Counted from the stretch's first letter, positions 1-17,784 are shown. The stretch: DNA of 25,344 bases from Paraphysomonas bandaiensis (GCA_965644295.1 CBFFRP010000250.1:1-25344), one strand, 5' to 3'. Notes: a model not told the origin generated them from the letters alone. Made by a program: numbers and translations.

Positions 1-3000
1 CAATGGCTTCGTCGGTGGTCATTGTCAACTGTAGTGTCGTGTCGTGTGGACACACTAATTATTCTCCTGCACTGTATAAGTGGCGACACACAAGGGAAGC
101 CTCTTTTCAGTTAGCCGAAAGAATCGACCTGATCAGGGTTCAGCTGTATCCGCCTCAAACATCGCACTTTCTGCATCACTTCTGGAAACTGTTCGATGCG
201 CTATATCATCTGTTCTGCCATCGTCGATTGACTTTGATGATCAGGATAGTTTGGTTTCGCTAGGTATTGACTCTTTAGGTGTGCTGCAGGTGCGTAACGA
301 GCTATCAAGGGAGTTTGGAGGAATTGATCTTCCGTCGGCTCTTGTCTTTGAATATCCTACTGTGGCGAGTGTCGCATCTTGCATTCAGCAGTTGCAGCTG
401 GGTTCGCAAAAGGGGTAGACGAAAATCCCGTGCAAACTCTCTGCTGCTGGAATTGCAACAACACAATAGGAAAGTTACATTTGATATGCCCAAGGAATAT
501 GAAGCGATGGCTTCTGCAACTCGTATGCAACAAGCGATGCTATTTCATTACATGTCAGACCCTTCTAGTGGGACATTCCTTGAAACGTTTTCATGGTACA
601 TCACTTCTGATGGTAGGATGAATCGCGTTAAGTTTGATGTTGCTGCGTTTCGTAACGCTTGGGTTGACACTATTATTGACCACGCCTCTCTGAGATCGTC
701 TTTTGATATGGAAGCATCCCCGCCAATAACTTGTGTGGAAGCCACATGTAATCGGCCTCAACAAGTCACAATATGAGGCTCAATATTCGTGGTTTGAATT
801 CTCATCTACAGTGTCTAATAGTAAGGATGGACCGTAAAATCAAAAATACAGGAGCATCGGCGATCAGGATGTGTGCATCCGGGAGATCCACTGTCGTTTA
901 AAGTCAGCTTGGTGAAATTGTCACAGAGTCAAACGGTAGAGTATGCACCTGATATTTTCTGTGCACCATGCCATAGTGGACGGTTGGTCGATACGCAATT
1001 TATTGCACTGTTTACGTGATAACTACACGCGATACGCCAGTGTACAAGGCCACTACCTCGATGAGCAATGTCAGCTGTTTCCATCATTCGAAGCCTATGC
1101 AATGTATGAAAATAGCTTGTTGGAATTTCCGGAAGCCCACGATCTGGATCTTCTTAAAGCGTTTTGGAGTAATAGTTTGAGAGGATGGAAGATACCGAAT
1201 GTATTTAATAATATGCTCCCTCTTATGATTAATACTTGATGAAGAAGTTATGCGCTGCGCTAAGTACTTGTCATCAGATTTGCTTATTGTATGCAGAAAA
1301 GCAGCTAGTCTAGTTGGTGTGACATTGGCATCTTTTTTCATGCATCATGGTCAGTGGTGTACAACTCATGGTTACGTTAGGACTTGGACACACCAGAGTT
1401 TTATACGGCTGCACTGCCACAGGACGATCGGCCGCGGTACAAGACCTAGGAGAAATAATTGGTCCTGTCATAAATACGTTCCCTGTTCGGCTGACGTGGG
1501 ACAATGATGAAAATGTGAAGTCATTCTTGGCAAGAGTTCACAAGCACCTACTGGATTGCATAAAGCATGAGAATCTTCCCTTTAACAGAGATTCAAAGGT
1601 TGACATCTACCCCTGTCAAAGGGTCTTTGTTTCCTGTAGTTTTTGATTATCAGCATGAGCAGCTTTTCAATTGTGAATTTGTGTGATCTTTATATTAAAA
1701 ATGACTCCTTGATCGATCGCATTGGTTGCCCACTTTCAGTCAGAACTGTTGTTGGGAGTGAGTCTGCGCAATTGATTGCAACTTCAGAATGTTTGAATAT
1801 AACTCGTCCTTCCTTGAAGGATTACTTTGTTCAGTGGAAATGTCGCTTCAGGCTCTTGCGTCCTGCATCGATTCAGATGATGGCCTTAAAACGACAATGC
1901 AGGACTTTGAGCGAAAAGTTTCTAGAAAGCTCATACCACTCCCCATTACCCACGACTTCCCAATCCTATACTTCCTGAGCGTCAGGTTGCAACGGGAGTC
2001 AAACATTGTACCCGGGTTGAATTGGTAAAGGCAATTGCTGGGACTCAGTTCACAAGGGCCTTATCTAATTGTTCTTATTATAAGTTGGAGTCCTTGAATT
2101 CGTGTATGTTGAGCGCCTTTTTAGTTGCAGTTAAACGCCACAGTAGCTCATCACTCTTCTCCATCGATTTTCTGATAAGGCATCATCCAGCCAGCACATT
2201 ACATTTAGTTTACACTCGAAGCTATCATGGTATGAGATGACCTTATTGGATGTCTTAAAACAGAGCGAGCTGGAGGAGCAACTTGCTATGAATAGGATAA
2301 ATATTTCTTCTGTGAAAAATCGTCAGAGATGTGTAATGTGGTATTCTGTGAATGGTCCAGTAACAACGAAGGTAATTACTTAGCCGGGGGCGTAAAAAAG
2401 GAAAATGACCCTGTTCTGTTTCCACACTGCTGGTGGAAGCTCTGCTCAATTCACGGGTTGGAAAGACGTGCTAACCAACATGGCCCAATGCAATGACGCA
2501 ACGAGTGTGTGGAATGTTGAGCTCGTTAGTGTCGATCTCCCTGGTCACGGCACGAAACTTTCTGAACCTGTTATGAAGGACTTATCTAGTATTGTAAACC
2601 ACTTGTTGATTTCATTGCGAGAAATGCTGTGGACAGAATCGGGGCATCCTAATCATTTTTGTTTCCTCGGATATTCGATGGGTGCTCTTGTAGCTCTATG
2701 CGAGCTTGCTCTTGCCGTGACAAAAAGCTTACGGTACTGGTCCTGACCACATATTTGCACTTCGCTGAAGCAGCCCCGATGCACATCAAATCTCGATGCG
2801 GACCCCTTTGGCTGACACAGGGTCTCTGATGAAGGATCTCACCAACCAGGGCTGGTATTCTAAAGATTTTCTTGACCTTTCTACTTCTGATGCTGAATTT
2901 TTCCTTACCACTGCACGGGCTGATTTACTGGTAGGAGAGCACTTATGTGTGGGATCCGGACAGCGCACAACAGTTGCATTGTCCTGTGACTGTTTTCTAT

Positions 3001-6000
3001 GGATGCGATGACACCACCCTAGTAGGACGAAGTGATATTGGTGAAGAAGCTGTATGGCATTGGAAAAAAGCGTCTGCTGGAGCATTCAACGTTCACGCCG
3101 TCCCTGGTGGGCATATGATCATGGACAGCGAAAGTAATAAAAAGTTCGTACTTGAGGAAGTATATTGTTCTATCAACCGTATTGACATCCATCCTGATGA
3201 AATATTTGCTAATTACTTAGTTTGCAATGTCATTCATGCGTCCCAGGATAAATTCACCTGCAAGCTATCTTTTTCTGATAAACTGGATACAACTGTAATT
3301 GAGAGCATTCACAAGACGTACTCTGCGATGCTTGATTTGGTTTGCTCGGATGACCCCCAGGTGTGGAAGAACCCTGTGTCCGAAGCAATCGCTCCCCTCC
3401 ATCGCCTGTGCCTGTTTCACCTCCATGTCCTCTCAGCAAAGATCTCATGTGACGAAGGGTTTATTCGTGTGTATGTAAGACTGCGACGAATTGTGATATT
3501 ATGCCTGCGGTTGTAAGTTACGATGAGTTGGGTGAGAGAGAGATGTCGTTATGTACTCTGATATGCAGCGATATGCTACGATAGTAGCTAGTGAATTGCT
3601 CAATAAAGTGCCTCTCTTTGATTGAGTCAAGCGTGGTGGCAGTTTTGATGGATATGGTTGGGGAACAAGTTGTAGCTGTACTGGGTGTGCATATGGCTCA
3701 ATGTGTCTATCTTCCTATGGATAGTCGTTCGTGGCCGGAGCATCGTGTTACTCAGGTTCTGGACCTTAGCAAGTGCGCAGCAAGCCGTGACTCAGTCTCG
3801 TGTATCATGTCGTCCTGTCAGTGGCTTAACGAAATTAGCATTCCAGTCATGGATGTGAACTCAGTAATAACTCGGCATGGGAAGCACCACACACCTGATG
3901 TAGATTCAGTTCTGTGTCGTAGAAAACGAGTAGATCCAACTGACCTTGCGTATCTAATTTACACCTCCGGTTCTACGGGTGTACCGAAGGGTGTGTGCTG
4001 CCACCACCAGGGAGCTGTGGAATACTATTGCGGATTTGAATGAGCGATTTTCGGTGACATCGTCAGATAGGGTGTTTGGCTTGTCATCATTAAGTTTCTG
4101 ATTTGTCGGTGTATGATATATTCGGCTTGCTCTCCGCCGGCGGCACGGTCGTGCTCCTCTGTCTAATTGTATACACCCCCCAGATCCTGAAGAATGGATA
4201 GGGATTCTGACAGCAGAGATGATTACAATATGGGACACTGTTCCAGCTTTCATGGAGTTGATGGTGACACACTGGTGAGTATTCAAATACCAGCTCCCTG
4301 CTAGCTTGCGTCTGGTATATGAGTGGAGACTGGATTCCGTTGTCTCTTCCAACGTATACGTGCCGTGTCTGCATGTCCCGATATTCGCATCATTAGTATG
4401 GGCGGGGCGACAGAAGCGGCAATATGGTCGAATATGTTTGAGCTGAGTAAAGAGGGATCTGGAATACCACCGGGGTGGTCCAGTATACCGTATGGTCGAC
4501 CACTCCGCAACCAAACAATGTATGTTCTCAATGAGGAACTGGACAACTGTGAATCATGGGTGACTGGTGGTATCTATATTGGTGGGGCAGGTGTAGCAAA
4601 AGGATATTATAATAACCCCGAGAGGACTCGATACCAGTTCATTGTGCACCCGCGAACTGGTGAGTCGCTGTTTCGCATTGGCGATTTGGGCCGTGTGCGT
4701 CCCTGTGGAAATATAGAGATATTGGGGCGTGAGGATTCACAGGTCAAGGTGTAAATGGGTTCCGCATAGAGCTAGGTGAGATCGAGCGTGTGCTGATGAA
4801 GGGATGTTGAGTATCATCGGCTGCGTTGACAGTGCATCATAATGCCCTGGGTGTGCGTATCTCGTATTAAATGATTATGGTGATGATTATTCCGCCCCAC
4901 ATGACGACATTATTGTAAGTCTTCGTGGTCTGTGTAAGGATTCATTAACCGACTATATGATTCCGCGGTATTTTATGTGTTTGGATGAACTTCCCCTCAG
5001 TTCAAACGGAAAAGTGGAGAGAAGTCGTTTGCCGACAATCACTGATGCGGAGACTTGCTATGACGATAGTATTGCGGACGTCGATTCTGAAGCATATTTC
5101 TCCCGCAATCCATTGGCAAGAGCATTACGCAATGTATGGGCAGAAATTTTGCATTGATTTTGTCTCTATACTTCCGGTTTCTAATTTCTTTTCCTTGGTG
5201 GGGACTCCTTATACCAATGCAAGTAGTGTCGCATGCTCGAAAGAGAGGAATCGTTGTCACAGTACCTCAGATATTCAACAATCCTACTATCAAGTCGCTT
5301 GTTGGTGTTGCCACGTCGGCAGCGTCATCTGGTCCCACTGTTCTGGGGACGAGTAGTGATAAGTCAAGCGGTAAACCTATTTTTGAGATAAAACCTGGAA
5401 AGCATAGTATGCTCAACGCTTATCCACTTATCGGTATCAATAAGGCTCACTTTGTCGGTCTACACACATCTTCTTATTCCCAGAAAGGCATTGCGCCCCA
5501 GATTTATTTCGAATGGGTTATGGGTGCGGAGGATGGGGGCTCTGATCCTGGACCTGGTAGATGTGCATACACTCGAGGAAGCTGTTACCCTTTTCGTGGG
5601 AAGGCATCCCCATTTCCGATCCTATGTGCTTCCAAGTGGACAAATGATGATGGATTAATTTTTGTCCAAAGTATAAGGTGTCCACATGTTGCACCGTGGA
5701 CTGGAGATGCTGCTGCTGCGGAGGCTAGTGCTCTAGAAACGCGGAGAGCTGACATGACTGCCAATGGGCCGAATGTGTACAAATGGCCGCTCTTTGATTT
5801 TCGTGTCACGCATATTGGCCCCACCACGTCTGTTATCCACGTCACAGTTTCATTATTCCTAATGGTCGCAATGGGAGATCTCATGTTCCGCCAGGAACTG
5901 TCAACCATATACAGAGCAGCTCTGTCTTGTGTGAGACAGGAAAAGCTGGGCGCGCTCACGGCGGCAAAGCTATCGTAAGAAGGAATTACCAGCTCCTTCA

Positions 6001-9000
6001 GAGGCTAATGTTCGCTGATTACTCCCACGCCATTGAGGAGTCCTTTACCCCTCTCAACAGAGTACATGCGTGCAAAAGAATTTTGGCTTGGGGAGATTGT
6101 CTACGCCTCCCTTCGGGGCCTGATTTGCCTTCTCTTTTCAGTGATAGCACCTAACTCAATTGTCTGACTCTGGAAAGTTTTGTAATTGGCACAGGTGGCT
6201 GTCAGTGGATGAATGGAATAACGCGGAAAGCTAATTGTGCCGCTCATTCAGTAACCATCCCTGCAATGTTGCTTGCTGTCTATTCGCTAACTATTGCCCA
6301 TTGGTCAAGGACAAAAAAGGTTTTTGCTAAATATTTTACAGTGTCTGAGACACCAGGTGCACCCCGATGTGAATAAGACTGTTGGCAACTGTAGTTCGAC
6401 CATACTGTGTGACATTGATATGACCCGAAAGAGCACAGACGAACCATTGTCTTTTCTTGTGGCCATCCAACGTGTTGCCAAAGAACTCTCTCAGAATCTA
6501 GAGCATGCATGCATGAGTGGCGTAGAGGTTATGCAAGAGCTAAATAGAGTTCAGGGTAAAACGTTTCAGGCGGTAGCCCCATTCATTTTCACAACTCCGA
6601 TTGGCGTCGAACAGGGAAATCAGCAAGTGTCGTCAAGAAATTGGATGTTCAAAGAGAGATTCTTCTCTGAAAGAGTACCTCATACGGCCTGTGTCAATGC
6701 AATTAAATCAGACCCCGCCGGTACAGCATGTGCTTCCATGGATATAGTAGAGGGAACTTTTCCAGATGAAGTAGTTCATGGGATGCACAAGACGTACTCT
6801 GCGATGCTTGATTTGGTTTGCTCGGATGACCCCCAGGTGTGGAAGAACCCTGTGTCCGAAGCAATCGCTCCCCCTCCATCACCTGTGCCTGTTTCACCTC
6901 CATGTCCTCTCAGCAAAGATCTCATGCACGAAGGGTTTATTCGTGTATGTAAGACTGCGACGAATTGTGATATTATGCCTGCGGTTGTAAGTTACGATGA
7001 GTTGGGTGAGAGAGATGTCGTTATGTACTCTGATATGCAGCGATATGCTACGATAGTAGCTAGTGAATTGCTCAATAAAGTGCCTTCTTTGATTGAGTCA
7101 AGCGTGGTGGCAGTTTTGATGGATAAGGGTTGGGAACAAGTTGTAGCTGTACTGGGTGTGCATATGGCTCAATGTGTCTATCTTCCTATGGATAGTCGTT
7201 CGTGGCCGGAGCATCGTGTTACTCAGGTTCTGGACCTTAGCAAGTGCGCAGCAGTTTTGACTCAGTCTCGTGTACTGTCGTCCTGTCAGTGGCTTAACGA
7301 AATTAGCATTCCAGTCATGGATGTGAACTCAGTAATAACTCGGCATGGGAAGCACCACACACCTGATGTAGATTCAGTTCTGTGTCGTAGAAAACGAGTA
7401 GATCCAACTGACCTTGCGTATCTAATTTACACCTCCGGTTCTACGGGTGTACCGAAGGGTGTGTGCTGCCACCACCAGGGAGCTGTGAATACTATTGCGG
7501 ATTTGAATGAGCGATTTTCGGTGACATCGTCAGATAGGGTGTTTGGCTTGTCATCATTAAGTTTCGATTTGTCGGTGTATGATATATTCGGCTTGCTCTC
7601 CGCCGGCGGCACGGTCGTGCTCCCTTCGTCTAATTGTATACACCCCCCAGATCCTGAAGAATGGATAGGGATTCTGACAGCAGAGATGATTACAATATGG
7701 GACACTGTTCCAGCTTTCATGGAGTTGATGGTGACACACTGTGAGTATTCAAATACTCAGCTCCCTGCTAGCTTGCGTCTGGTATATATGAGTGGAGACT
7801 GGATTCCGTTGTCTCTTCCAAATCGTATACGTGCCGTGTCTGCATGTCCCGATATTCGCATCATTAGTATGGGCGGGGCGACAGAAGCGGCAATATGGTC
7901 GAATATGTTTGAGCTGAGTAAAGAGGGATCTGGAATACCACCGGGGTGGTCCAGCATACCGTATGGTCGACCACTCCGCAACCAAACAATGTATGTTCTC
8001 AATGAGGAACTGGACAACTGTGAATCATGGGTGACTGGTGGTATCTATATTGGTGGGGCAGGTGTAGCAAAAGGATATTATAATAACCCCGAGAGGACTC
8101 GATACCAGTTCATTGTGCACCCGCGAACTGGCGAGTCGCTGTTTCGCACTGGCGATTTGGGCCGTGTGCGTCCCTGTGGAAATATAGAGATATTGGGGCG
8201 TGAGGATTCACAGGTCAAGGTAAATGGGTTCCGCATAGAGCTAGGTGAGATCGAGCGTGTGCTGATGAAGGACAAGCGAGTATCATCGGCTGCGTTGACA
8301 GTGCATCATAATGCCCTGTGTGCGTATCTCGTATTGAGTGACATGAATGGATCTGTAGATATAGAGGGTAGCAGCGATTATAGTGATGCTAGTCATGATG
8401 AGGTGTTTCAGAATTTGCGAGAGTTATGTCAAGATACACTTACTGACTATATGATTCCACGCCATTTTGTTGTATTAGATGAGATACCACTCAGTGCCAA
8501 CGGAAAGGTAGAACGAAGTCGACTTCCTCTTCCAGATGCAGTGTCCTCTGCATTTTTATCATCATCCATCCTTGATTCTAAAAAAGTTGATCCTTCGTCG
8601 AGATTAGAGGCTGCCATTGTGGAATCGTTTGCTGCTGTGTTGCAAATGGAAGAATCTCAAATATGCTGCCAAAGTGACTCGTTTTTCGCCCTAGGGGGGA
8701 ATTCTGTTTCGGCAATTCAGTTGTTATTCCGGATACGGAGTGATAGTGGAGAGTCTATTAGTGTTCAGGAGCTATTCGCTGCGCCCACTGTATGTGGTAT
8801 TGCAGCAACCATCTCTGCTAGAAGCGCGAAGACATCTCAAAATGGCGCGCAGGTCATAGAAAGTGATGGTTACGAGATCATTTGCCTGCAGGCAGGGTCT
8901 TCTGACGAAGTTCCTCTTCTTCTCTTTAATCCTGCAGGCGCAACTGGACTCTGGTAAGTTTGATAGTGGAAAATACCATATTGCTCTAAAGTGTATTCAC

Positions 9001-9792
9001 AGTTACTCTGACTTGTCCGAGCATCTAGATGGGAAGTATCCCGTCTACTGTCTCGATGACGGGGCGATTCTGAAGAATGTTGAGCGTAATGAATCCAGTA
9101 TTGATGCAGTGGCCGAAAAATGCCTACCTCTCGTTGTCAAATTTGCAAGTGCATACGGGTGTGTTTTATCAGGTAGAAATTCGCCCGATAGTGCAGTGAA
9201 AAAGGTAGTTCTAGGCGGATGGTCGTATGGTGGGGTCGTGGCTACAGTTGTGGCTGAAAAACTCTCCAGCACACCCACTCTCACGCGTTACAATGTGGAC
9301 GACGCGTGTTCTTTGGAAATAGCGGGGATAGTACTTTTTGATGCTCCTCTACGGAATGGTTCTTCAAATCTGAATGATATGCAAAGTGCAGACGAAAATG
9401 CTACTGCTGATGATGTGAGGTCTTGGATAAACCAATTCCATGGGCAAAGTGAGGAACTTTCTACTGAGAAAACGGTTGCCTCACATTTTTCCTACTGCAC
9501 ATCACTCTTGCGAAGGTTTTATGAACGCCAAAAGCGTGAGCGTCCCCTGTTATCGTGTCCTGTGCTTGATATTAGAGCTTCGCAATCGACATATAACTGT
9601 AGTGTTGAAGATGTGGAGGAAGTTTCATCCGGCGTTATCAGCACACACAAAACTGCAGGCAGTCACTTTACCATGTTATTTGGAAAAAACACTGCAGGGG
9701 TTGCTAAACTGGTTAAAAAATTCAATCGATTCGTGGAGAAATGTATTATAATCGATGGAACGCTCGTATCAGAGGTATTTTTTTCGTGTTGA
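1..9792 (+). CDS. Hybrid polyketide synthase / nonribosomal peptide synthetase, 5'-partial (ACP-C-Cy remnant/TE-A-PCP-Cy-A-PCP-TE); many apparent frameshifts in 1-~6300; one intron at 8954-9002
   Basis: Collinear domain motifs across the fragmented ORFs: GIDSL, HHAIVDG, GYSMG...GGH, YTSGSTGVPKG (x2), GGDSL, Cy-like motifs, FRTGDLGR, NGKVERSRLP (x2), GGNS, GWSYG...GSH. ORF 6294..8957 splices in frame to ORF 8863..9792. That the whole span is one gene is inferred. Confidence 0.85.
170..390 (+). other. PKS-type acyl carrier protein domain
   Basis: LVSLGIDSLGVLQVRNELSREFGGIDLPSALVFEYPTVASVA: GxDSL with the Ser at 272-274, plus the type I PKS ACP-typical LPxxLVFxYPT helix-III motif. Confidence 0.85.
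490..1900 (+). other. NRPS condensation domain with intact active-site motif (frameshifted in this assembly)
   Basis: ATRMQQAMLFHY (C1), FRNAW...HASLRSSF (C2), HHAIVDG at 964-984 (C3), YGCTATGR...IGPVINTFPVR (C5), HENLPF. Confidence 0.85.
2400..3180 (+). other. Internal thioesterase domain of type II (GrsT/RifR-like) appearance
   Basis: LFCFHTAGGS, VDLPGHG, FLGYSMGALVA (Ser 2675-2677), RADL, CPVTVFYGCDD, VPGGH (His 3112-3114). ORF 2947..3516 runs in frame from the TE C-terminus into the sequence preceding the first A domain. Confidence 0.85.
3310..4868 (+). repeat. Direct repeat copy 1 (~1.56 kb), near-identical to 6786-8335
   Basis: Starts cacaagacgtactctgcgatg and ends tgcgtatctcgtatt in both copies; differences are mostly 1-2 nt indels plus a few substitutions. 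Confidence 0.95.
3440..5035 (+). other. Adenylation domain 1, cysteine-type family (frameshifted copy)
   Basis: LAYLIYTSGSTGVPKGV, SMGGATEAAIWS, IPYGRPL, GGIYIGGAGVAKGY, GDLGR, LGREDSQVK, PLSSNGKVER. Near-identical at DNA level to A domain 2 over most of its length. Confidence 0.9.
5105..5310 (+). other. Peptidyl carrier protein (PCP) domain of module 1
   Basis: LRNVWAEIL...NFFSL, ggtggggactcctta (GGDSL) at ~5197-5211, then MQVVSHARKRGIVVTVPQIFNNPTIKSL; reading it requires small indel corrections. Confidence 0.85.
5415..6830 (+). other. Heterocyclization (Cy)-family domain, atypical
   Basis: YPLIGINKAHFVG, LEEAVTLFVGRHPHFRSYVLPSGQ, WPLFDFRVT, FADYSHA, LPSGPDLP, RFLLNILQCLRHQVHPDVNKTVGNCSS, LEHACMSGVEVMQEL and PFIFTT align in order with Cy-domain consensus blocks. 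There is no HHxxxDG. Confidence 0.8.
6786..8335 (+). repeat. Direct repeat copy 2 (1.55 kb), near-identical to 3310-4868
   Basis: Same boundaries as copy 1; this copy keeps an open reading frame. Confidence 0.95.
6915..8530 (+). other. Adenylation domain 2, cysteine-type family (intact frame)
   Basis: Core motifs present: YTSGSTGVPKG, SFDLSVYDIFG, SGDWIP, SMGGATEAAIWS, FRTGDLGR, GREDSQVKVNGFRIELGEIE, DYMIP, NGKVER. SGDWIP and GGATEAxIWS typify Cys-activating A domains of Cy modules (PchE/HMWP2/EpoB type). Confidence 0.95.
8590..8820 (+). other. PCP domain of the terminal module
   Basis: DSFFALGGNSVSAIQL (Ser 8703-8705) ... ISVQELFAAPTV. Confidence 0.9.
8900..9760 (+). other. Terminal type I thioesterase domain
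   Basis: After splicing: LLLFNPAGATGLCYSDLSEHL; GGWSYGG (Ser 9223-9225); LFDAP; GSHFTML. Confidence 0.9.
8954..9002 (+). other. Spliceosomal intron (49 nt) in the PKS-NRPS thioesterase
   Basis: GTAAGT...TTCACAG; removal joins ORF 6294..8957 to ORF 8863..9792 in frame and restores a TE N-terminal motif (PAGATGLCY). Confidence 0.9.
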
Positions 9793-10237
9793 CAAATTTC
9801 TCCATCATATGACACCTCTAATAGAGCATTCTACAATCAATATGTGTTTTGACTTTTCGGCGTCTTGTTGCTTTTGCACTCAGCATGGAATATCATGTGG
9901 TTTCACACATTATCATTCCATCGTGCTTTGTGTTAAACACAACGAATACGTTTTCTATCAGTAATAAATATATATATCATTAACGATAGATACTGGCTTG
10001 TTATTTCTAGCTGATACCTTTCGATTTGTACTATATATTGGTTGGATTTATTTCGAGTAAGATTTAAGTGTATTTGAGAAGTACGATATGAATAGAAAAT
10101 TAGTACAATTGTCTACAAGAATACTGTATATAATATATTCCTTCCACTCATAGAAATATATGTATGACGCCAAAAAAATTAATTAGATTATATGATACAA
10201 TAGTATGTATCGTAATATTTGTTGTATACTTCAACTG

Positions 10238-11752
10238 TCACATAACAGTACATCCATCCTCTCGACGTTGTGCTCTTTCTAGCAACGGAACAATATCTCT
10301 GGCGTGTAAGTAATTCGAGCTGTCGGCAAATTTTTTGTGAAGATCGACATAGAACTTGCTGCGAGGGTTGTTGTAAAAGTATATATCATACTCCTTCGTG
10401 GTATGGATTCTACCCAGTAATTCATCAAGTGTGTACTTGGAGAACGGAAGGTCTTCATACATGGCATTGATATCGTCTGGGTTAAGAGATGCAACAAGAT
10501 GACTAACAAGCCAAAAACCCCTCGTGTAAGGAAAAGTTGGACCTTCGAATCTTTACAAGATACAATAAGTTCAAATATATATGGGCCTGAAGCAGACTAC
10601 CTTAAGACGCGCTCCTTCTCTTCTTCATAGGACGCAATTTCATTAGTAAAACTTAGGGGATCAACTCCGCGCATCTACAAAAAGAAACTCATAAATTGCA
10701 ATATACCCCTACGACTAGTTCACCTTTAGTACGACATCTCCTTCGTCCTCTTCCAGAAGCGCTTTACGGCCTACATCTCTCATCCAATCGCAACCCGAAC
10801 TTTGTGCCCCAACACACGATATGAAGGTCAGCGGTGTGTGGGAGCTGTCACTACGCTCCCAAACAAAAGATCGTAGTTTCTCTAGAGAGGCATCAGTTGG
10901 AAGTGTTGCAGCTAGAACATAGTGGGCAGTTGGCTCATGCAGGTGTTGCGTGTGCCCTATACTTTCTTGTAGGGCAGTTAATACCGGGCAAGAAGTACTG
11001 AGAAGCCCTCCTTCTCGCTCTACTGCTCTAAAAGCGGACGCTATAGTCGAATGAGCTTCTCTCATAAACTCACTTGGAGGGCGCCCTCGGGGGGAAAGGG
11101 TCGCCACTCGAGGACACTGCATAAATCGGATAGATATGCTCCGCACTGGTATAAAAGCCAGTAAGTCTACAAATATATGAAGCTTGTTCTGCGTCTCCCT
11201 CCAGCGGGACATGGGAGCTTCTTCATCAGATTCGGAGCCTGAACTATTGTCGCCGTGCTCTCTCTGATGACCAGTGGCAAGAGTATTCCTATCGTAAGAC
11301 ATCACATTGGTACAAAGTGATACATGAAACTCTTACTCAACGTCATCGGTCATAGACGCATTGTCCCCAATGATAAAATTCAAGTGGTAGTTTCTTAGAG
11401 CGAGCAGCTTATCGAGCAGCCCTATGGGTATATTATACTGCTCAAAGTACTGACATATCTCTTCAAATAGATGCATCCGCTCATGAGGGACCCCTGAGAC
11501 AAACTCCCTGCAGTACTCGGGTGATCTCATGGTCCGTCGAGCGGCTGTAACGCTCTCTGCAAGCCTGCATTCCATATTGATCCCTGTGTCCCTCTCTATC
11601 GCTATACTCGCATGCTCCGCCTCATCTATGCTAGATACTATAGCCAGACGATTCGACTCATCGTACTGGTAGTACTTCTCCAACAACATACCAGATGTAT
11701 GCTCTCGTCGCTCATGCAGAGCTCCGTCTTTAAATATATATCTCCTCGGCAT
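10238..11752 (-). CDS. vWA-like domain protein with degenerate MIDAS and C-terminal CaaX (CTVM); exons 11752-11337, 11288-10724, 10674-10601, 10550-10238
   Basis: Three GT-AG introns (11336-11289, 10723-10675, 10600-10551; 48-50 nt) join the ORFs in frame. LNFIIGDNASM...SRWRE resembles a vWA first strand with DxSxS, followed by alternating strand/helix segments. The gene model is firmer than the product call. Confidence 0.7.
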
Positions 11753-13099
11753 TATGAGTTCCTTGTGGCTCTATATATACATACATACATACACAGTGCT
11801 GTGCTGTCGATGTACACTGTCTTCAAAGTCATCTGCAGTTGAAATTGGCTTACCCTCCCGAAGTTGAAGACTCTTCATCATTATGATTTTCTCCACGTTA
11901 CAACCAATTATATGCTAGCTATCATATTTGATTTGCTGGAGTGGGATGTAGTGTTGTTCTTCAACATTGAGAACTGCAGACTCGTAGGAAGTCATATGCT
12001 GCTGCTGGTGTTTCCCTGCGAACAGAATTTCATCCTCTCTGGATTGGTCAAGCCGAAATCTTGAAAAGCAATTGTAGCTACAAATGCTGCTGTATTTGGT
12101 GTATAGACGGTATTCTTATATTCACTGCAATACAATACAGGAATCGATTAATATCCAATGATTTCCGAACTCTTGATGATGATTAGTCTAGTTGTATGTT
12201 GTGGTATATGATGAAGAGTGCATGGAACGATGGGATGTGGTAACTCCTTCTGTGATGTATGGATTTACTTACTGTGTGATTGTGAGGCACGCAACTGGAT
12301 CATCATTCTTTTATCAGCTTGATCTCGCTCTGTGTTGGTTGTTGTCGCTTACACTTTCATCTGTTCAGCGCTTTACATTCCAAGGAAGCTGGTTTATTAC
12401 ATAGGGGTATAACCACACAGAAGATACCAAAAGATCAAATCAATTAGTCACAAAGACTCGATAAAGCTGTATTCCAGTATACAGAAACTACACTAAGTTA
12501 TGATGACTTTGTGTTAGGTTTTTTGGTGTGTCTGAAGGCATTTAGTGCCACAGAAGCTTTAAATAACCCTCTGGTTTCGTATCAGTTATAATTTTTCAGT
12601 TCGGCAATGAGGTTTCAACCTGAGTTCCTCTACAGTAAATTTTCTAGGGTTAAACGCCTCTTAAATTATCGTTGACGATGGATGAAGATGTAACAATTAT
12701 TGGTTCCGTCAATCATCCGAAGATCGATGACTTCCTCTGCTTTGAACTGAGATCCCGTATATAGGACCCTTTTCACTCGACACGCAACCTCATAGTAAGC
12801 CTTTGTTGCTTAACATTAGCATTGATTCAGTTGTCATGATGTGTGTGTAACGCTGGGTATATTGTGTGCACCACATAACCATTACATTGAGCACTAGTTC
12901 CTGCTGTGATTGCTCTATATACAGCGGTTTACTTTTCTGACACCAAAGATATATATTATTATTACAGATAACTACTCATGTTGTGGACGTTATATGTGCC
13001 AGTATTTTTCTGTATCATATATATACAGTTGTATGGTTCATACGTGATGCACAGAAACACTGCGCACTGTGCCGTGTCCTTTTCGGTATACTGATTTTT

Positions 13100-15720
13100 A
13101 GAATTGGACTTTATACTAAAGTTAACTTTGCTCCGCACGTAAACCTTAAACTTTAATTGTTGCACTCAACGTACTTTCAAGGAAGAATTATAATTATTAA
13201 TCTCAACACTTCAAAAAATATACATATATGAATGAAGATATAATCTTAATAATAGTAAGAAGAATGCTGTGATTCTTGGAATGCAAAAAGTGCCTAACAA
13301 TGACGATCGTTATAATAACGTTATTGAATCTTCAACATATACTATTATTAATTCAGTTTGTGATATATTTCATTGAACACTATAATTCACATATACAATT
13401 GTATAATCGAGATTGCCATGATATTAGACTATTACCTATAAAGAATGTGAATGCAGTGGTTGACCGTCGATTGAGGTGGCATCGCATCCAGCCGCTATCA
13501 CAGTATCCTGATAATGTTATGTTGGATCCAGAATATGTCAGTCCTTATTTGGCAATACAGGCAGTTAGATTAGGCAAATCAGAGAATCGTCAAAAGTATT
13601 GACAGCGAATGCAATTTCTGGTCGAGTACACACACCTAAGTGCATCAAAGAGCGAATGAGTTCATTGTAGGGGAAATTCTGAACATAGCTTTGATATGAG
13701 TATGATAGATTGTTGAATTCATGTAGATCATAGTTAAATCAGAGCAACATAGGTGTGGACATGGAATCGCAGTCAGACATGTTAAATTTATCCAGCAGTT
13801 TGATAACATATATTGCTCCTGGCTGAACGTCGTGGTATTTTTGTCGAAATCCTGATTGATGGAAATGCCTAAGTAGTAGTCCAGGGGTCCGAGTTCCGTG
13901 ATTTAGAACTTTTTTTTTGATAAGGCTTTTGAATTCTTGGATGTCGATATCTGACTCCGACGCGATAATGTGGTCATCGACATACATGGCAATTAGCATA
14001 ATTCTGCCGTCGATATGTTTTTTAAATATGCACGAGTCAGATACTAATCTAGTATACCCATGTCTAACATGAAATTAGTACAACATTTATACCAGTTTAG
14101 ACCGGCTTGTTTAGATCCGTAGATACTTTTTAATAATCTGAGTACCTTGATATCGGGGATGTTCATATATGGAGGGGGATACATATGTAGATTTCTTCCT
14201 CAAGGTTGGCATTGATGTAAGCGATGGTAAAATCGATCTCTGGTGGAGTTTGAGATTCACAATAGTTGCAAGGGCGATGATGGTCCGTCGTGATGTCGCC
14301 TTCTTGGCTACAGGGATGTACGTTTCATTGTAATCGATGCCAGGTATTTGGGTGAATCCCTGAGCAACCAGTTGAGCTTTGAATTTTATATCATATATAT
14401 CGCTTTCTTTTAATTTTAAAATTAAGCTTTCCTTTTATGGCTCACGCTCCCGATGGTACCTCTAGTATCCTTTCTTTTGGAGAGTGGAAAATTTTTATTG
14501 ATCGCGTCGATGCAATTTTGAATCGAGAATTGATACGTTTGTGAGCAACTGCTCTATATTCCGTGTATTCCTCGGTATATCGTTAGACGTCGTCTGCAGC
14601 GTGTATAGGTCGTCGAGTTGAATAATACTGCCGCTATTATCCTAGTCCACGGTACGCTACAATTAGTCCTTTTTTCACTTTTATCTGTGTTGTTACGCAG
14701 GTTAGGCCATCATCCGGGCCAATATGTAAGAGTCCTATGAGGTATTTGAAACTCTCAATCGTCCTGGAGGTCTCGTTTTCTATGAATATTTTCGTCAATT
14801 TCTGTAAATATTTTTTATCTGGTGATGGAATACATTCATTGAAGGAAACGTGTCCTGATAATACAAAACCTCTTAGTGCCGGGACAAAGGTTATGTAACC
14901 CGGTCCATCCTCACGATAACCCATAAAATAGCCGGATAAACGATGTCTGTCCCAATTGTTCCTTCGAAGGCTGGAATCAATATTTACAAAACATTTACAT
15001 CCCCAATTCCTGCGTAGCTCAGATCGGGGATTTCATTTTCAACGAATTGTAACATAAATCCCTTTGCAGTTGAGCATGACAATGTGTTTTTCAGATATAT
15101 GTAGATGTGTTTCACAGCATCATGTTCCCAGAAATTGGCCGCAAGGCCAGAATCCATTAGACTGATGAGTGCTCGTTGTTTAATCGTTCTCCAGGTCGTT
15201 CCTGAAATGGATTATCGTCGGGGGTATAGGGAGAATTAACAGTCTACCTATAAGGAGGTAATCCAATGCTTTACTGGATATTAATTCTGGCTACAGTCGG
15301 CGTGATAATGTTTACCTTTACTCCGCAGGTATGTAATGATACTCCGGATAGAATCGATGACAAAGTCTTCATCTCTCGTTTTTACGTAAAAATTTCATTT
15401 GACGGGAGGCTTTTCATTGCTTTTATATGGGACTTTCCGCTCACACAAACCACCAGGGAGAGAGGCAGCACTAATCTCTACCTTCGTAAGCTTGACACCT
15501 AGAGATTGTATTGCTTTCTGTGTAAACCCGATGGAAGCGTGTGCGAGTCTTTTGTATTCTAAGACCCTCAACAAAGTCGGACTCGCACCTTTTCGTGGTG
15601 TTCTGGGGGATAAGTACCGGAGATATTTCTCCGGGAAACTAACGTGAGCCGCAAACATAGTCAGCAGATATATGTTCTGCCCACTCATAGCCAAATGCTT
15701 GTGTGGTACAAGGGACACTA
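13100..15720 (-). mobile_element. Degenerate Ty1/copia LTR-retrotransposon pol remnant (GAG-pre-integrase, integrase, RT, RNase H)
   Basis: Minus-strand order: YKRLAHAS (pre-integrase), WRTIKQRA...SGLAANFW (integrase), WGCKCFV...[45 protein letters not shown] (RT), GYCDSGW...RRSTT, ISWQSR (RNase H). Integrase before RT indicates copia. Many stops and frameshifts; boundaries approximate; LTRs not found. Confidence 0.92.
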
Positions 15721-15766
15721 ATAAGTGTCACTTGTGTAGACGTCTTTGGGCCCTAACGAATAAACA

Positions 15767-15831
15767 GGCATCCGGGAATGGGCCCACCTCAAGGGCATCC
15801 GGGACAGGGCCCACCAGAAGGGTAACCGGGG
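15767..15831. repeat. Short degenerate 27-bp tandem repeat
   Basis: ggcatccgggaatgggcccacctcaag / ggcatccgggacagggcccaccagaag / partial ggtaaccgggg, starting at 15767, 15794 and 15821. Confidence 0.7.
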
Positions 15832-16360
15832 TATTGGGCTGCCTGCTGAAGTTAAGCATCCGGGATGTTCACCTTAAGAACTCAAAAAACCTGAAGTCAG
15901 CAGATGTCAGGTATATCAACATTCTGCTTGCTCCCTGTGTTTGCTTTGAGTGATTGATGCTGAGTATGAGTTCACATTATTCGGTATCTGTGTGGCCAAT
16001 GACCGAGGTAATGCGTCAAACTTTCCTCATGGATGCATGGCAATGACAATGATGTGATTGGACCTGTCATGTCTTCTCACACGTCTACTGCCTAGTCTTG
16101 GTTTCTCCTGACCCAGGTCATTGAGATTATATCAAGGCTCTGGCACTGTTCTCCAAGCAGTGTCAGGTACATTTGTGGTGCTTTTATGTTATTCTTGCTT
16201 AGTAGGTTTTCATCCGAGCGGGGAAGGTGCACGGTTTCCTACTAGTGTAAGTCACTCGGGAGAAGAGTGCAAGGTGGATGCATGTGCTGGACGAGTGCAC
16301 ACAATGGAGGGAAGACATCGGAGTCAGCTTGAATTTGTAAGATTTTGGTAGATGTCTGTT

Positions 16361-17282
16361 TCATGCGTCAGTTGTGGGGTCATCTCCCATTTCCATATAC
16401 ATAACACCTGCAAACGTCGGAGAGAAACGCATCATCACGTCCCCATCACCGGTGGCAGCGCATCCACCTACTGAGCCATTCACATAGCATCCAGATCCTG
16501 CAATAGGGGAGTCACCCACACGACCTCGAACCTTGTGGTTGGCACCATTGGTTGTTGTTCCACAGGACATATGTCCGAACTCATCAATAGCCACAATCCC
16601 AATGGTGTCATGATTATCGTTGGTGGCCCATGGAATGTGTACCCTTGTTTTGTGTTCCCGTTCCAACAGCAATGAAGACGAAGGGTGAGGGTAGGGCCCG
16701 CAGCTGTCTTCACATCCCTCAAGATTCTGATAAAAATTAGGTTGGCATCCACTTTCTCGCCACTGCGCAAACTCTTGCAACGATTCACTTGTCGCTGTGT
16801 TTTGCGCTTGAGCTCCAATCATATGTGCAAATTCTTCTGCGCCAGAACCCACTAAAAGTGTATGGGTAGTATACTCCATCACTGCACGGGCAATGCTGGC
16901 TGCATTTCTGTATCCTGACAAGAACGCTACTGATCCGACATCCATCTAAAATATATTAACTATGAGCATACAATCCATTCGACATAGTTATACTCACACT
17001 CTGTCCATCCATGATCATAGCATCTAACGTAACCCCTGCATGCGTGTCAGGGTGATTGCCGTATCCTACACTTCCATCACACTGATTTACTTCGCATGCA
17101 GTGCATCCAATTTCAACAGCAGTCAGGCAATCTGCCCCGTTACTTAGAGCATCGTATGCAGCTTCTGTCGCCACTGTGAACGGCCCGGCCCATGTGTTGA
17201 CTACTATCTTACACTCACATGTCGCAGCTATACAAAGTAACAGAGCTATTGAACGGCGATGGAACAGAGTGATATGGCTCAT
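16361..17282 (-). pseudogene. AGA: N(4)-(beta-N-acetylglucosaminyl)-L-asparaginase (glycosylasparaginase), C-terminally truncated; intron 16997-16946
   Basis: Signal peptide, VVNTW, CDGSVGYG..PD...TLDAMIMDG, CQPNF, autocleavage site NHDTIG, GRVGDSPIAGSG, ATGDGD. The 52-nt GTGAGT...TTTAG intron joins the two ORFs. Homology ends abruptly at GDDPTT. The family call is strong; pseudogene status is inferred. Confidence 0.85.
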
Positions 17283-17784
17283 TACTCTCTATAGGTGTTC
17301 TGTCACAAGCAATAAACTGAGTTAGGGGAATGTATAGTATGAGCACAGGAATAATTCCAATAGCTAGTAGGCCTATGGCTGGATACTCTGCGCGTGATGT
17401 AGAGGAGTGCAGTGTGGAGTAGATACTGCAGAAAACAAGCATCACAGGAGAGAAATGTTAATATTATTTACAGAAAGTGCGTAAAAATCTTGGAAATCGT
17501 AATAGAATATCCGGATATATAGATAAAAGTTATCACAGTAGGATCCGATCAGCACATACAGCAGTATCTATACCGAGTACTGTACTAGAAATTCCTACAG
17601 AGTATGTATAAAACGTCAGGACGTATGCTGGTCTATACACGAATTCCAACATGCTGTACTCTGCGGACAGTGTATGGCAGCAAGACATAAACTTGTTGCC
17701 ATCATCTATCTATCCATCTCTTTGTCATTGCCCCACCCGCCAAATATCTAACGTCACTACTCTCAACTATATTTTACGCGTAAT

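What the first reader, a model, noticed from the sequence alone, without database searches (positions are those of the whole stretch)
1..9792. Bacterial-style heterocyclization PKS-NRPS assembly line in an intron-containing eukaryotic genome
Seen: a PKS-type ACP followed by C, internal TE, A, PCP, Cy, A, PCP and TE. A real spliceosomal intron sits in the last domain, and typical eukaryotic genes lie next door. Known: Cy-A(Cys) modules with SGDWIP/GGATEAxIWS motifs are characteristic of bacterial pathways (pyochelin, yersiniabactin, epothilone, bacitracin) and are poorly documented in protists. Inference: the gene makes an acyl/polyketide product extended by two copies of the same Cys-like residue, possibly a metal chelator or thiol metabolite. 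No oxidase, methyltransferase or epimerase domain is visible in this window.
Basis: partly seen in the sequence, partly recalled or inferred. Interest (0 to 1): 0.9.

Follow-up and report, generated by a model that had tools for sequence, protein, structure and literature searches.

The report
Spliced protist PKS-NRPS, non-cyclizing Cy domain
The window holds the back two-thirds of a real, transcribed and spliced gene of a marine chrysophyte-like flagellate for a bacterial-type PKS-NRPS. Its "ring-forming" Cy domain lacks the key catalytic aspartate, so a thiazoline siderophore is unlikely, and the many frame breaks in the first 6.3 kb are assembly errors.

Summary
Window 1-9792 encodes ACP-C-(type II-like TE)-A-PCP-Cy*-A-PCP-TE. 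The 49-nt GT..AG intron 8954-9002 is spliced out in two RNA data sets and kept in two DNA data sets. The eukaryotic context is solid.

- **Artefact.** About 67 small indels break the frame in window 1-6313. They are consensus errors at the end of this 25-kb contig. A second contig (C619) carries one 3579-codon open frame, and four independent runs lack the extra letters.
- **Not a heterocyclizing line.** The Cy* domain belongs to the Cy clade (BmdB Cy2, E 1.5e-31). However, DxxxxD is SxxxxD, GDFTS is GNCSS, and the cyclodehydration Asp of the Thr-Asp dyad is Val. The same rewriting is conserved in all six eukaryotic relatives.
- **A domains.** A1 and A2 are identical over about 520 residues and carry a Cys-type code with one unique change (DLYDYSMIWK).
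- **Most likely chemistry.** A beta-ketoacyl unit is joined to two identical Cys-like residues by amide bonds and released without thiazoline rings.
- **Relatives.** Epipyxis, Cymbomonas and uncultured flagellates. Both intron positions are shared with one of the uncultured relatives.
- **Organism.** Near Paraphysomonas.
- **Earlier reports.** This scan already reported the same gene on other contigs (s1-443460, s1-445149, s1-443531).

No paper describing the family was found.

The parts
1..6313 (+). Zone of consensus errors at the contig end. About 67 indels of 1-4 nt (about 10 per kb) break the reading frame.
   Evidence: indels against contig C619 stop sharply at 6313, and the third contig C367 starts at window 6280. 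X1, X2, X13 and X14 all lack the window's extra letters. Depth in 4880-6660 equals depth in 8440-10200, so there is only one copy.
188..385 (+). PKS acyl carrier protein (LGIDSL at 260-277). It follows KS-AT, which lie upstream of the window on contig C619.
   Evidence: (PP-binding, 5.9e-14)
492..1762 (+). Condensation domain C1 with an intact HHAIVDG motif (964-984)
   Evidence: 1e-32; McyB and PvdL C domains
2408..3141 (+). Internal type II-like thioesterase (GYSMGA at 2669-2686, GGHMIM at 3106-3123)
   Evidence: 5.5e-20; the thioesterase of PDB entry 3qmw/3qmv, RifR, SrfD, FAS TE II
3310..4874 (+). A1 copy of the 1.55-kb identity tract. The A1 core is 3516-4610, and the tract starts in the C-terminal tail of a vestigial Cy domain (HKTYSAMLD).
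   Evidence: (A1 = A2 over about 520 residues in C619)
5122..5303 (+). PCP1 (LGGDSL at 5194-5211)
   Evidence: (2.2e-14 on the C619 copy)
5421..6818 (+). Cy-lineage condensation domain (Cy*) with rewritten motifs: YPLIGIN 5421-5441, SLFLMD (read on C619), GNCSS 6384-6398, FIFTT 6582-6596, HTACVN 6681-6698
   Evidence: (BmdB Cy2 1.5e-31, EpoB, HMWP2, PchE)
6990..8507 (+). A2 adenylation domain (core plus C-terminal subdomain): FDLSVYD 7563-7583, WDTVP 7698-7712, SGDWIP 7791-7808, GGATEAAIWS 7872-7901, NGKVER 8499-8516
   Evidence: (1.8e-64)
8613..8810 (+). PCP2 (LGGNSV at 8691-8708)
   Evidence: (7.9e-10)
8871..8953 (+). Terminal thioesterase, first exon part (…LLLFNPAGATGL)
8954..9002 (+). Spliceosomal intron, 49 nt, GT..AG, phase 2, within a Cys codon
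   Evidence: the joint 8952->9002 is seen in RNA runs X13 and X14 and not in DNA runs X1 and X2; an intron sits at the same position in relative L012.
9003..9792 (+). Terminal thioesterase, second exon, with stop codon 9790-9792. Triad motifs: GGWSYGG 9214-9234, VLFDAP 9331-9348, AGSHF 9655-9669.
9793..9961 (+). 3' untranslated region. RNA contigs end at 9946-9961.
   Evidence: table 8 (X13 record 14, X14 record 17)

Best explanation
Shown. Window 1-9792 is the 3' two-thirds of one nuclear gene of about 13.3 kb in a marine heterotrophic chrysophyte-like flagellate. The nearest named transcriptome is Paraphysomonas MMETSP1103. The full enzyme, read on contig C619, is (GNAT-like)-ACP-KS-AT-ACP-C-TEII-A-PCP-Cy*-A-PCP-TE. 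It is transcribed and polyadenylated. It is spliced at 8954-9002 (RNA evidence) and probably also inside the KS domain (sequence only). The frame breaks in 1-6313 are errors of this contig, not decay.

Inferred mechanism.
1. The upstream PKS module has no KR, DH or ER domain, so it leaves a beta-ketoacyl chain on the ACP (188-385). This is probably acetoacetyl.
2. C1 has an intact HHxxxDG motif and forms an amide with the residue loaded by A1 on PCP1.
3. Cy* keeps the second Asp of DxxxxD and the Thr of the dyad, but has Val for the dyad Asp. It therefore adds the second, identical residue by plain condensation, without cyclodehydration.
4. The terminal TE has a Ser-Asp-His triad and releases the product.
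5. The residue is cysteine or a close analogue. The code is DLYDYSMIWK, against DLYNLSLIWK for canonical Cys.
6. The internal type II-like TE most likely edits or unblocks carrier domains.

The expected product is a small sulfur-rich N-(beta-ketoacyl)-dipeptide or a cyclised derivative of it. It is not a thiazoline siderophore.
For: - Architecture.
- One open frame of 3579 codons on C619.
- Indels confined to 1-6313 and absent from four independent runs, with equal depth on both sides of 6313.
- Intron skipped in RNA only, and transcript end near 9960.
- Cy-clade membership and motif changes.
- The same rewritten motifs, strongly conserved in six eukaryotic relatives, against canonical motifs in 16 bacterial Cy domains.
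- Role of the dyad Asp and of the second Asp of DxxxxD: 10.1101/2024.12.18.629141 and PMC8149447.
- The closest solved A domains are those of Cy modules (BmdB, FmoA3, PchE).
- The relatives' codes DLYN(Y/F/M)S(M/L)(I/V)W fall within the bacterial Cys-module range.
- A1 equals A2.
- Active KS and AT motifs with no reductive domains.
- TE triad motifs.
- Eukaryotic context.
- Organism.
Against: - No product or enzyme assay exists.
- The first Asp of DxxxxD is also lost, so even condensation by Cy* is unproven.
- Asn to Asp at code position 4, unique to this organism, could change the substrate.
- The role of the internal TE is a guess. It is absent from four of six relatives.
- The GNAT hit is weak (E 0.008), so the starter unit is uncertain.
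- RNA evidence comes from assembled contigs, not raw reads.
Confidence: 0.65

Rival explanations
1. Cy* is a working heterocyclization domain, and the line makes a thiazoline-containing, metal-binding product like pyochelin or yersiniabactin.
For: Cy-clade membership. Cys-type A domains with SGDWIP and GGATEAxIWS motifs. The Thr of the dyad and the second Asp of DxxxxD are retained.
Against: The dyad Asp is Val. GDFTS is GNCSS, and Q-V-x-L-D is H-T-A-C-V. All these changes are conserved across relatives. Mutating this Asp abolishes heterocyclization in studied Cy domains. Module 1 has an ordinary C domain. There is no aryl-cap loading, reductase, oxidase or methyltransferase.
Confidence: 0.07
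2. Cy* has been repurposed for non-amide chemistry on cysteine. Examples would be sulfur transfer, C-S cleavage or C-C bond formation, as in TlnC of thiolactomycin or CaeA2 of caerulomycin. The product would then be a new sulfur metabolite class rather than a simple acyl-dipeptide.
For: The rewritten motifs are strongly conserved, which points to purifying selection on a new active site rather than decay. There are precedents for Cy domains in PKS-NRPS lines doing other chemistry with Cys. The beta-keto acyl donor resembles the CaeA2 situation.
Against: TlnC chemistry needs the dyad Asp, which is missing here. No partner flavoprotein, P450 or Ct docking domain is seen in the gene or in the flanks examined.
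Confidence: 0.18
3. Cy* is catalytically dead. Module 2 is skipped or serves only as a scaffold, or C1 acts twice.
For: Two of the three classical Cy catalytic acidic residues are lost.
Against: The domain and its downstream A-PCP are conserved at 48-56% identity in relatives, with invariant new motifs. A2 is kept identical to A1 by conversion, and PCP2 has its Ser.
Confidence: 0.07
4. The window copy is a decaying paralogue or pseudogene, and its frame breaks are real.
For: About 67 frame-breaking indels in 1-6313.
Against: Indels outnumber substitutions and stop sharply where another contig starts. No contig in any of four runs matches the window's version. Depth is equal on both sides of 6313, whereas the true two-copy A repeat shows double depth.
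Confidence: 0.03

Closest known systems
Hypothetical protein CYMTET_48558 of Cymbomonas tetramitiformis (KAK3241698.1), the EukProt Epipyxis sp. PR26KG protein P005861, and unnamed metagenome proteins P0151, P0006 and P0007
   Same: All are colinear from KS to PCP2 (35-57% identity). All carry the same rewritten Cy* motifs and two near-identical Cys-type A domains, and a terminal TE was detected for Cymbomonas, Epipyxis and the P0006 locus. In the P0006 locus both intron positions are shared.
   Different: None of them is characterised. The internal TE is found only in Cymbomonas and the window gene. The relatives keep Asn at code position 4.
BmdB (bacillamide synthetase) Cy2-A module, PDB 5T3E and 7LY7
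   Same: It is the best or near-best solved match for both Cy* (1.5e-31) and the A-domain pocket region (9.5e-55). It has the same A-domain signature motifs.
   Different: BmdB has DxxxxD, GDFTS and the Thr-Asp dyad and makes a thiazoline. The window domain has SxxxxD, GNCSS and Thr-Val.
TlnC/StuB (thiolactomycin) and CaeA2/ColA2 (caerulomycin/collismycin) PKS-NRPS lines with non-canonical Cy domains
   Same: A PKS module hands a chain to a Cy-lineage domain paired with a Cys-activating A domain, and the outcome is not a thiazoline.
   Different: These are bacterial, and they keep DxxxxD and the dyad Asp (TlnC changes the Thr instead). They depend on partner P450 or flavoprotein enzymes, which are not seen here.
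Pyochelin (PchE/PchF) and yersiniabactin (HMWP2) synthetases
   Same: Cy-lineage domain and Cys-type A domain family.
   Different: Those lines start from salicylate, use working Cy domains and have reductase or methyltransferase tailoring. None of these features is present here.
Chrysochromulina tobin PKS-NRPS (PMC4580454)
   Same: It is a hybrid PKS-NRPS in a eukaryotic alga.
   Different: It is a far larger, reducing multimodular PKS with a single C-A insertion. No Cy-lineage domain or paired Cys modules are described for it.

Membership tests
NRPS heterocyclization (Cy) domain | Sequence belongs to the Cy clade of condensation-family domains | tested here: met
   all eight solved matches are Cy domains (BmdB Cy2 1.5e-31, EpoB, HMWP2/Irp2, PchE, FmoA3)
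NRPS heterocyclization (Cy) domain | DxxxxD motif in place of HHxxxDG | tested here: not met
   the motif is SLFLMD. The first Asp is Ser (Ser or Asn in relatives) and the second Asp is retained.
NRPS heterocyclization (Cy) domain | Thr-Asp cyclodehydration dyad (BmdB T1196/D1226) | tested here: not met
   Thr is kept (FIFTT). Asp is replaced by Val (HTACVN against bacterial QVWLD). Val or Ile occurs in all six eukaryotic relatives.
NRPS heterocyclization (Cy) domain | Paired with a Cys/Ser/Thr-activating A domain | tested here: inconclusive
   the code is DLYDYSMIWK against DLYNLSLIWK. It lies in the Cys clade, but position 4 is Asp. No assay exists.
Hybrid type I PKS-NRPS | KS-AT-ACP module covalently followed by C-A-PCP modules in one polypeptide | tested here: met
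   on contig C619. The window itself starts at the ACP. KS and AT active-site motifs are present.
Eukaryotic nuclear gene (as opposed to bacterial contaminant) | Spliceosomal intron removed in RNA, polyA transcript, and linkage to eukaryote-only genes | tested here: met
   (joint in the X13 and polyA X14 RNA contigs only). (dynein heavy chain, mitochondrial carrier and DUSP protein on C367). (intron in the neighbouring asparaginase gene).
Type I chain-release thioesterase | Alpha/beta-hydrolase with GxSxG Ser, Asp and His | tested here: met
   (PF00975). GGWSYGG, VLFDAP and AGSHF. The two exons were searched apart and the joined form was not searched.
Aryl-capped thiazoline siderophore synthetases (pyochelin/yersiniabactin type) | Salicylate or aryl loading, working Cy domains, reductase or methyltransferase tailoring | tested here: not met
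   loading is GNAT-like-ACP-KS-AT and no reductase, methyltransferase or oxidase domain is found; the Cy dyad is incomplete.

The most novel reading that the evidence does not exclude
The rewritten Cy* domain (SxxxxD, GNCSS, Thr-Val) would define a new functional subclass of condensation-family domains that evolved inside eukaryotes. It is conserved with invariant new motifs in chrysophytes, a phagotrophic prasinophyte and uncultured marine flagellates. Under this reading it performs chemistry other than amide formation plus cyclodehydration on a beta-ketoacyl-Cys-Cys scaffold. That would give an unknown class of sulfur-containing metabolites made by abundant marine bacterivores.
Probability: 0.18. 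Interest if true: 0.8.

Novelty: new variant of a known kind. Interest (0 to 1): 0.6.

Why it matters
Cy-lineage NRPS modules are almost unknown in eukaryotes. Here one is fixed, spliced and expressed in a cosmopolitan marine bacterivorous flagellate. It is found in sea-water metagenomes and polyA metatranscriptomes from many studies.

Several features mark it as a long-resident, selected eukaryotic pathway whose product is unknown:
- It is shared with distant protists.
- Intron positions are conserved with one uncultured relative.
- The active site has been rewritten in a conserved way.
- The two A domains are homogenised within every lineage examined.

The finding also has practical value. 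It offers a natural experiment on what a Cy domain does without its dyad aspartate. It also warns that this contig's frame breaks, and possibly its tail, are assembly artefacts.

Tried and rejected
- **Pfam on broken pieces.** Scanning the window's broken pieces missed PCP1 and Cy*. This was resolved on the intact C619 copy.
- **Pseudogene reading.** Rejected on the indel pattern, the absence of the indels in reads and the depth parity.
- **Contamination reading.** Rejected on splicing and on eukaryotic neighbours.
- **Specificity code from memory.** I began to place the code using remembered GrsA numbering and dropped this as unreliable. The positions were read instead by alignment to BmdB, PchE and FmoA3 and checked against bacterial Cy-module A domains.
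- **TlnC-like sulfur transfer.** Considered, but that chemistry needs the missing Asp.
- **Literature.** Searches for a described protist or algal counterpart found none.
- **Orphan ORF.** The protein-atlas search on the 610-residue ORF 21532-23364(-) gave nothing.
- **Not done.** No search or fold used the joined (spliced) TE sequence. No structure prediction, complex prediction or taxon-labelled phylogeny was run.
Full report
**What the window is.** The window is the whole of a small contig (G000:C250, 25,344 bases) of a 62.5-Mb assembly in 669 contigs. On the plus strand, 1-9792 is not one open frame. Only 6291-8954 and 8860-9789 are long and open, and the first 6.3 kb changes frame every few hundred bases. 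Pfam on the open pieces gave PP-binding, Condensation, Thioesterase, AMP-binding, then AMP-binding plus PP-binding and Thioesterase.

**The frame breaks are assembly errors.**
- The same locus is present on contig C619 (98% identical over window 1-15114) and on C367 (from window 6280 onward).
- On C619 the gene is a single open frame of 3579 codons.
- Against C619 the window has about 67 indels of 1-4 nt and about 55 mismatches in 1-6313, a rate of about 10 indels per kb. There are only two more indels up to 11776. The change falls where C367 begins.
- Contigs of four public runs were laid on 4880-10200. Two were DNA runs under two organism labels, one was a culture RNA run and one was a polyA metatranscriptome. 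All omit the window's extra letters, and none matches the window's version.
- Word depth is the same on both sides of 6313 (10.6 against 9.9 in X1; 178 against 161 in X2). The true two-copy A-domain repeat shows double depth (346 in X2). There is therefore one copy per genome, not an intact gene plus a decayed paralogue.
- No contig is error-free. C619 lacks one base inside PCP2 at window 8694.

**Anatomy.** The C619 copy was scanned in two referenced pieces. It reads (weak GNAT)-ACP-KS-AT-ACP-C-TE-A-PCP-C(Cy-like)-A-PCP, followed by TE. Mapped to the window:

| Part | Window coordinates | Motifs |
|---|---|---|
| ACP | 188-385 | LGIDSL |
| C1 | 492-1762 | HHAIVDG |
| Type II-like TE | 2408-3141 | GYSMGA, GGHMIM |
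| A1 core | 3516-4610 | |
| PCP1 | 5122-5303 | |
| Cy* | 5421-6818 | |
| A2 | 6990-8507 | |
| PCP2 | 8613-8810 | LGGNSV |
| Terminal TE | 8871-8953 and 9003-9789 | GGWSYGG, VLFDAP, AGSHF |
| Stop codon | 9790-9792 | |

- The best solved matches of the internal TE are the thioesterase of PDB entry 3qmw/3qmv, RifR, SrfD and FAS TE II.
- KS (DTACSS, HGTGT) and AT (GHSLG) look active, and no KR, DH or ER domain is present.
- No oxidase, methyltransferase or epimerase domain was found.

**Intron, transcript and genomic context.**
- RNA contigs of X13 and X14 skip 49 nt, GT..AG, at 8954-9002. DNA contigs of X1 and X2 run through it.
- One X14 RNA contig of 4171 nt covers 5723-9961 with only this gap. 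RNA contigs end at 9946-9961, giving a 3' UTR of about 170 nt.
- A second likely intron, GTAAGC..TGCAG and about 56 nt long, interrupts the KS domain on C619. This rests on sequence only.
- In the window, an Asparaginase_2 gene has its own roughly 50-nt GT..AG intron, and a copia-type RT fragment lies at 13739-13999.
- On the 95-kb contig C367 the NRPS gene is followed by a xanthine/uracil permease, a mitochondrial carrier, a DUSP protein and a dynein heavy chain.
- One caveat applies to the window's tail. Window 15565-16372 is an 810-nt repeat with at least 40 copies at 97-99% identity. C367 matches the window up to 15565 and then diverges. The 290-kb contig C234 matches from 16369 onward and diverges on its other side. 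The adjacency of the NRPS gene to the asparaginase, HAD and MFS genes therefore rests on this low-quality contig alone. It may be a misjoin or a haplotype variant.

**The 'Cy' domain.**
- Its solved matches are all heterocyclization domains: BmdB Cy2 (1.5e-31), EpoB, HMWP2/Irp2, PchE and FmoA3.
- Read against BmdB, the motifs differ as follows:
  - DALLMD becomes SLFLMD.
  - GDFTS becomes GNCSS.
  - PIVFTS becomes PFIFTT, so the Thr is kept.
  - QVYLDN becomes HTACVN, so Val replaces the Asp partnered with that Thr. I identify this as the T1196/D1226 dyad of BmdB from the spacing of 30 residues. The numbering is from my own knowledge.
- An alignment with six eukaryotic relatives and 16 bacterial Cy domains shows that every bacterial domain has the canonical residues. 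Every eukaryotic one has the rewritten residues, inside blocks that are nearly invariant among them. This indicates a conserved new state, not decay.
- Published mutagenesis reports that the second Asp of DxxxxD is needed for condensation. It also reports that the dyad Asp is needed for heterocyclization, and that a mutant lacking it accumulates the condensation intermediate (10.1101/2024.12.18.629141; PMC8149447).
- I therefore infer condensation without ring closure.

**The A domains.**
- The nearest solved A domains are those of Cy modules: FmoA3 (325 bits), BmdB (321 bits) and PchE.
- By alignment to BmdB and PchE, the pocket residues read D-L-Y-D-Y-S-M-I-W-(K), against D-L-Y-N-L-S-L-I-W-(K).
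- Relatives carry DLYN(Y/F/M)S(M/L)(I/V)W. Bacterial Cy-module domains in the hit list include DLYNFSMIW and DLYNMSMIW. Only the Asn-to-Asp change is special to this organism.
- A1 and A2 are identical in protein for about 520 residues. At DNA level this is the 1.55-kb tract 3310-4874 against 6786-8341.
- In every relative, A1 and A2 are 73-97% identical to each other but only 46-63% identical between species. This shows recurrent homogenisation in each lineage.

**Relatives and organism.**
- An exhaustive profile-free search with exon 6291-8954 found five colinear relatives at 46-57% identity. They are ENA and JGI metagenome proteins, Epipyxis sp. PR26KG (EukProt) and Cymbomonas tetramitiformis KAK3241698.1.
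- The next-best hits, at about 33% identity, are bacterial NRPSs with repeated Cy-A-PCP modules, for example from Desulfobulbus elongatus.
- The JGI relative lies on a 166-kb contig beside HYDIN/CFAP65, DRC10, COPI-associated and ubiquitin genes, so it is eukaryotic.
- In that relative, the gene calls break at the same two places as here, and GT..AG introns lie at the same codon positions in KS and TE. The introns therefore predate the split of these two species.
- The internal TE is detectable only in the window gene and in Cymbomonas.
- A neighbouring HAD gene is 94% identical to the representative of a 90%-identity protein cluster. That cluster also holds a protein labelled MMETSP1103, taxid 36769, which is the genus Paraphysomonas, a colourless phagotrophic chrysophyte. 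The next hits are Chlorochromonas and Dinobryon.
- This HAD gene sits on the possibly misjoined side of the contig, but it belongs to the same assembly.
- The stretch occurs nearly word-for-word in runs of 13 studies, including sea-water metagenomes and polyA metatranscriptomes.

**Comparison with what is known.** The gene is a hybrid type I PKS-NRPS of bacterial lineage. It fails two of the defining catalytic features of a Cy domain. It lacks everything else that defines pyochelin- or yersiniabactin-type lines. The nearest functional precedents are bacterial PKS-NRPS lines in which a Cy-lineage domain paired with Cys does something other than make thiazoline (TlnC, CaeA2), but those keep the Asp that is lost here. 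Four literature searches and two papers on algal PKS/NRPS found no description of this family. Earlier agents of this scan reported the same gene on the other contigs and reached compatible conclusions. My tests of the motifs, splicing, A-domain identity and relatives were made independently here.

**Verdict.** The finding is a new variant of a known kind, of moderate to high interest. The joined (spliced) TE was never sent to a search, and its exons were searched apart by reference.

Noticed in passing
window 15565-16372: An 810-nt dispersed repeat with at least 40 copies at 97-99% identity across the genome. It looks like a young mobile element. Contigs C367 and C234 diverge from the window at its two edges, so contig C250 may be a misjoin or a haplotype structural variant.
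   Followed up: partly
window 13739-13999 (-): A fragment of a copia-type reverse transcriptase (RVT_2, 1.5e-05). It lies next to a 190-nt stretch (13106-13296) that is present in the window but absent from C619 and C367.
   Followed up: no
window 3310-4874 vs 6786-8341, and relatives P0151, P0006, P0007, P0008, P0158: A1 and A2 are homogenised within every species (73-100% identity) but only 46-63% identical between species. This indicates recurrent intragenic conversion in each lineage, not a one-off event in this genome.
   Followed up: yes
L012:9957-10001 and L012:19600-19660 (JGI metagenome contig, relative P0006): GT..AG introns lie at the same codon positions in KS and in the terminal TE as in the window organism. 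The neighbours there are ciliary and other eukaryotic genes.
   Followed up: partly
window 2408-3141: Among the relatives sampled, the internal type II-like thioesterase is detectable only in Cymbomonas. It is absent from Epipyxis and from the three metagenomic relatives.
   Followed up: partly
window 8694 / C619: Contig C619, otherwise the intact copy, lacks one base inside PCP2. This shifts its frame before the terminal TE. The window and the PP-binding match show that the window is correct there.
   Followed up: yes
window 21043-23364 (-): A large open frame (610 plus 162 residues) with no Pfam family and no usable ESM Atlas hit.
   Followed up: partly
window 10241-11770 (-): A convergent gene of unknown function lies just past the 3' end of the NRPS gene. 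It consists of three same-frame open pieces with no Pfam hit. An RNA contig of X14 begins at 10166.
   Followed up: no
window 16946-16997 (-): A roughly 50-nt GTGAGT..TTTTAG intron splits the Asparaginase_2 gene (16364-17288). It is about the same size as the intron in the NRPS gene.
   Followed up: partly
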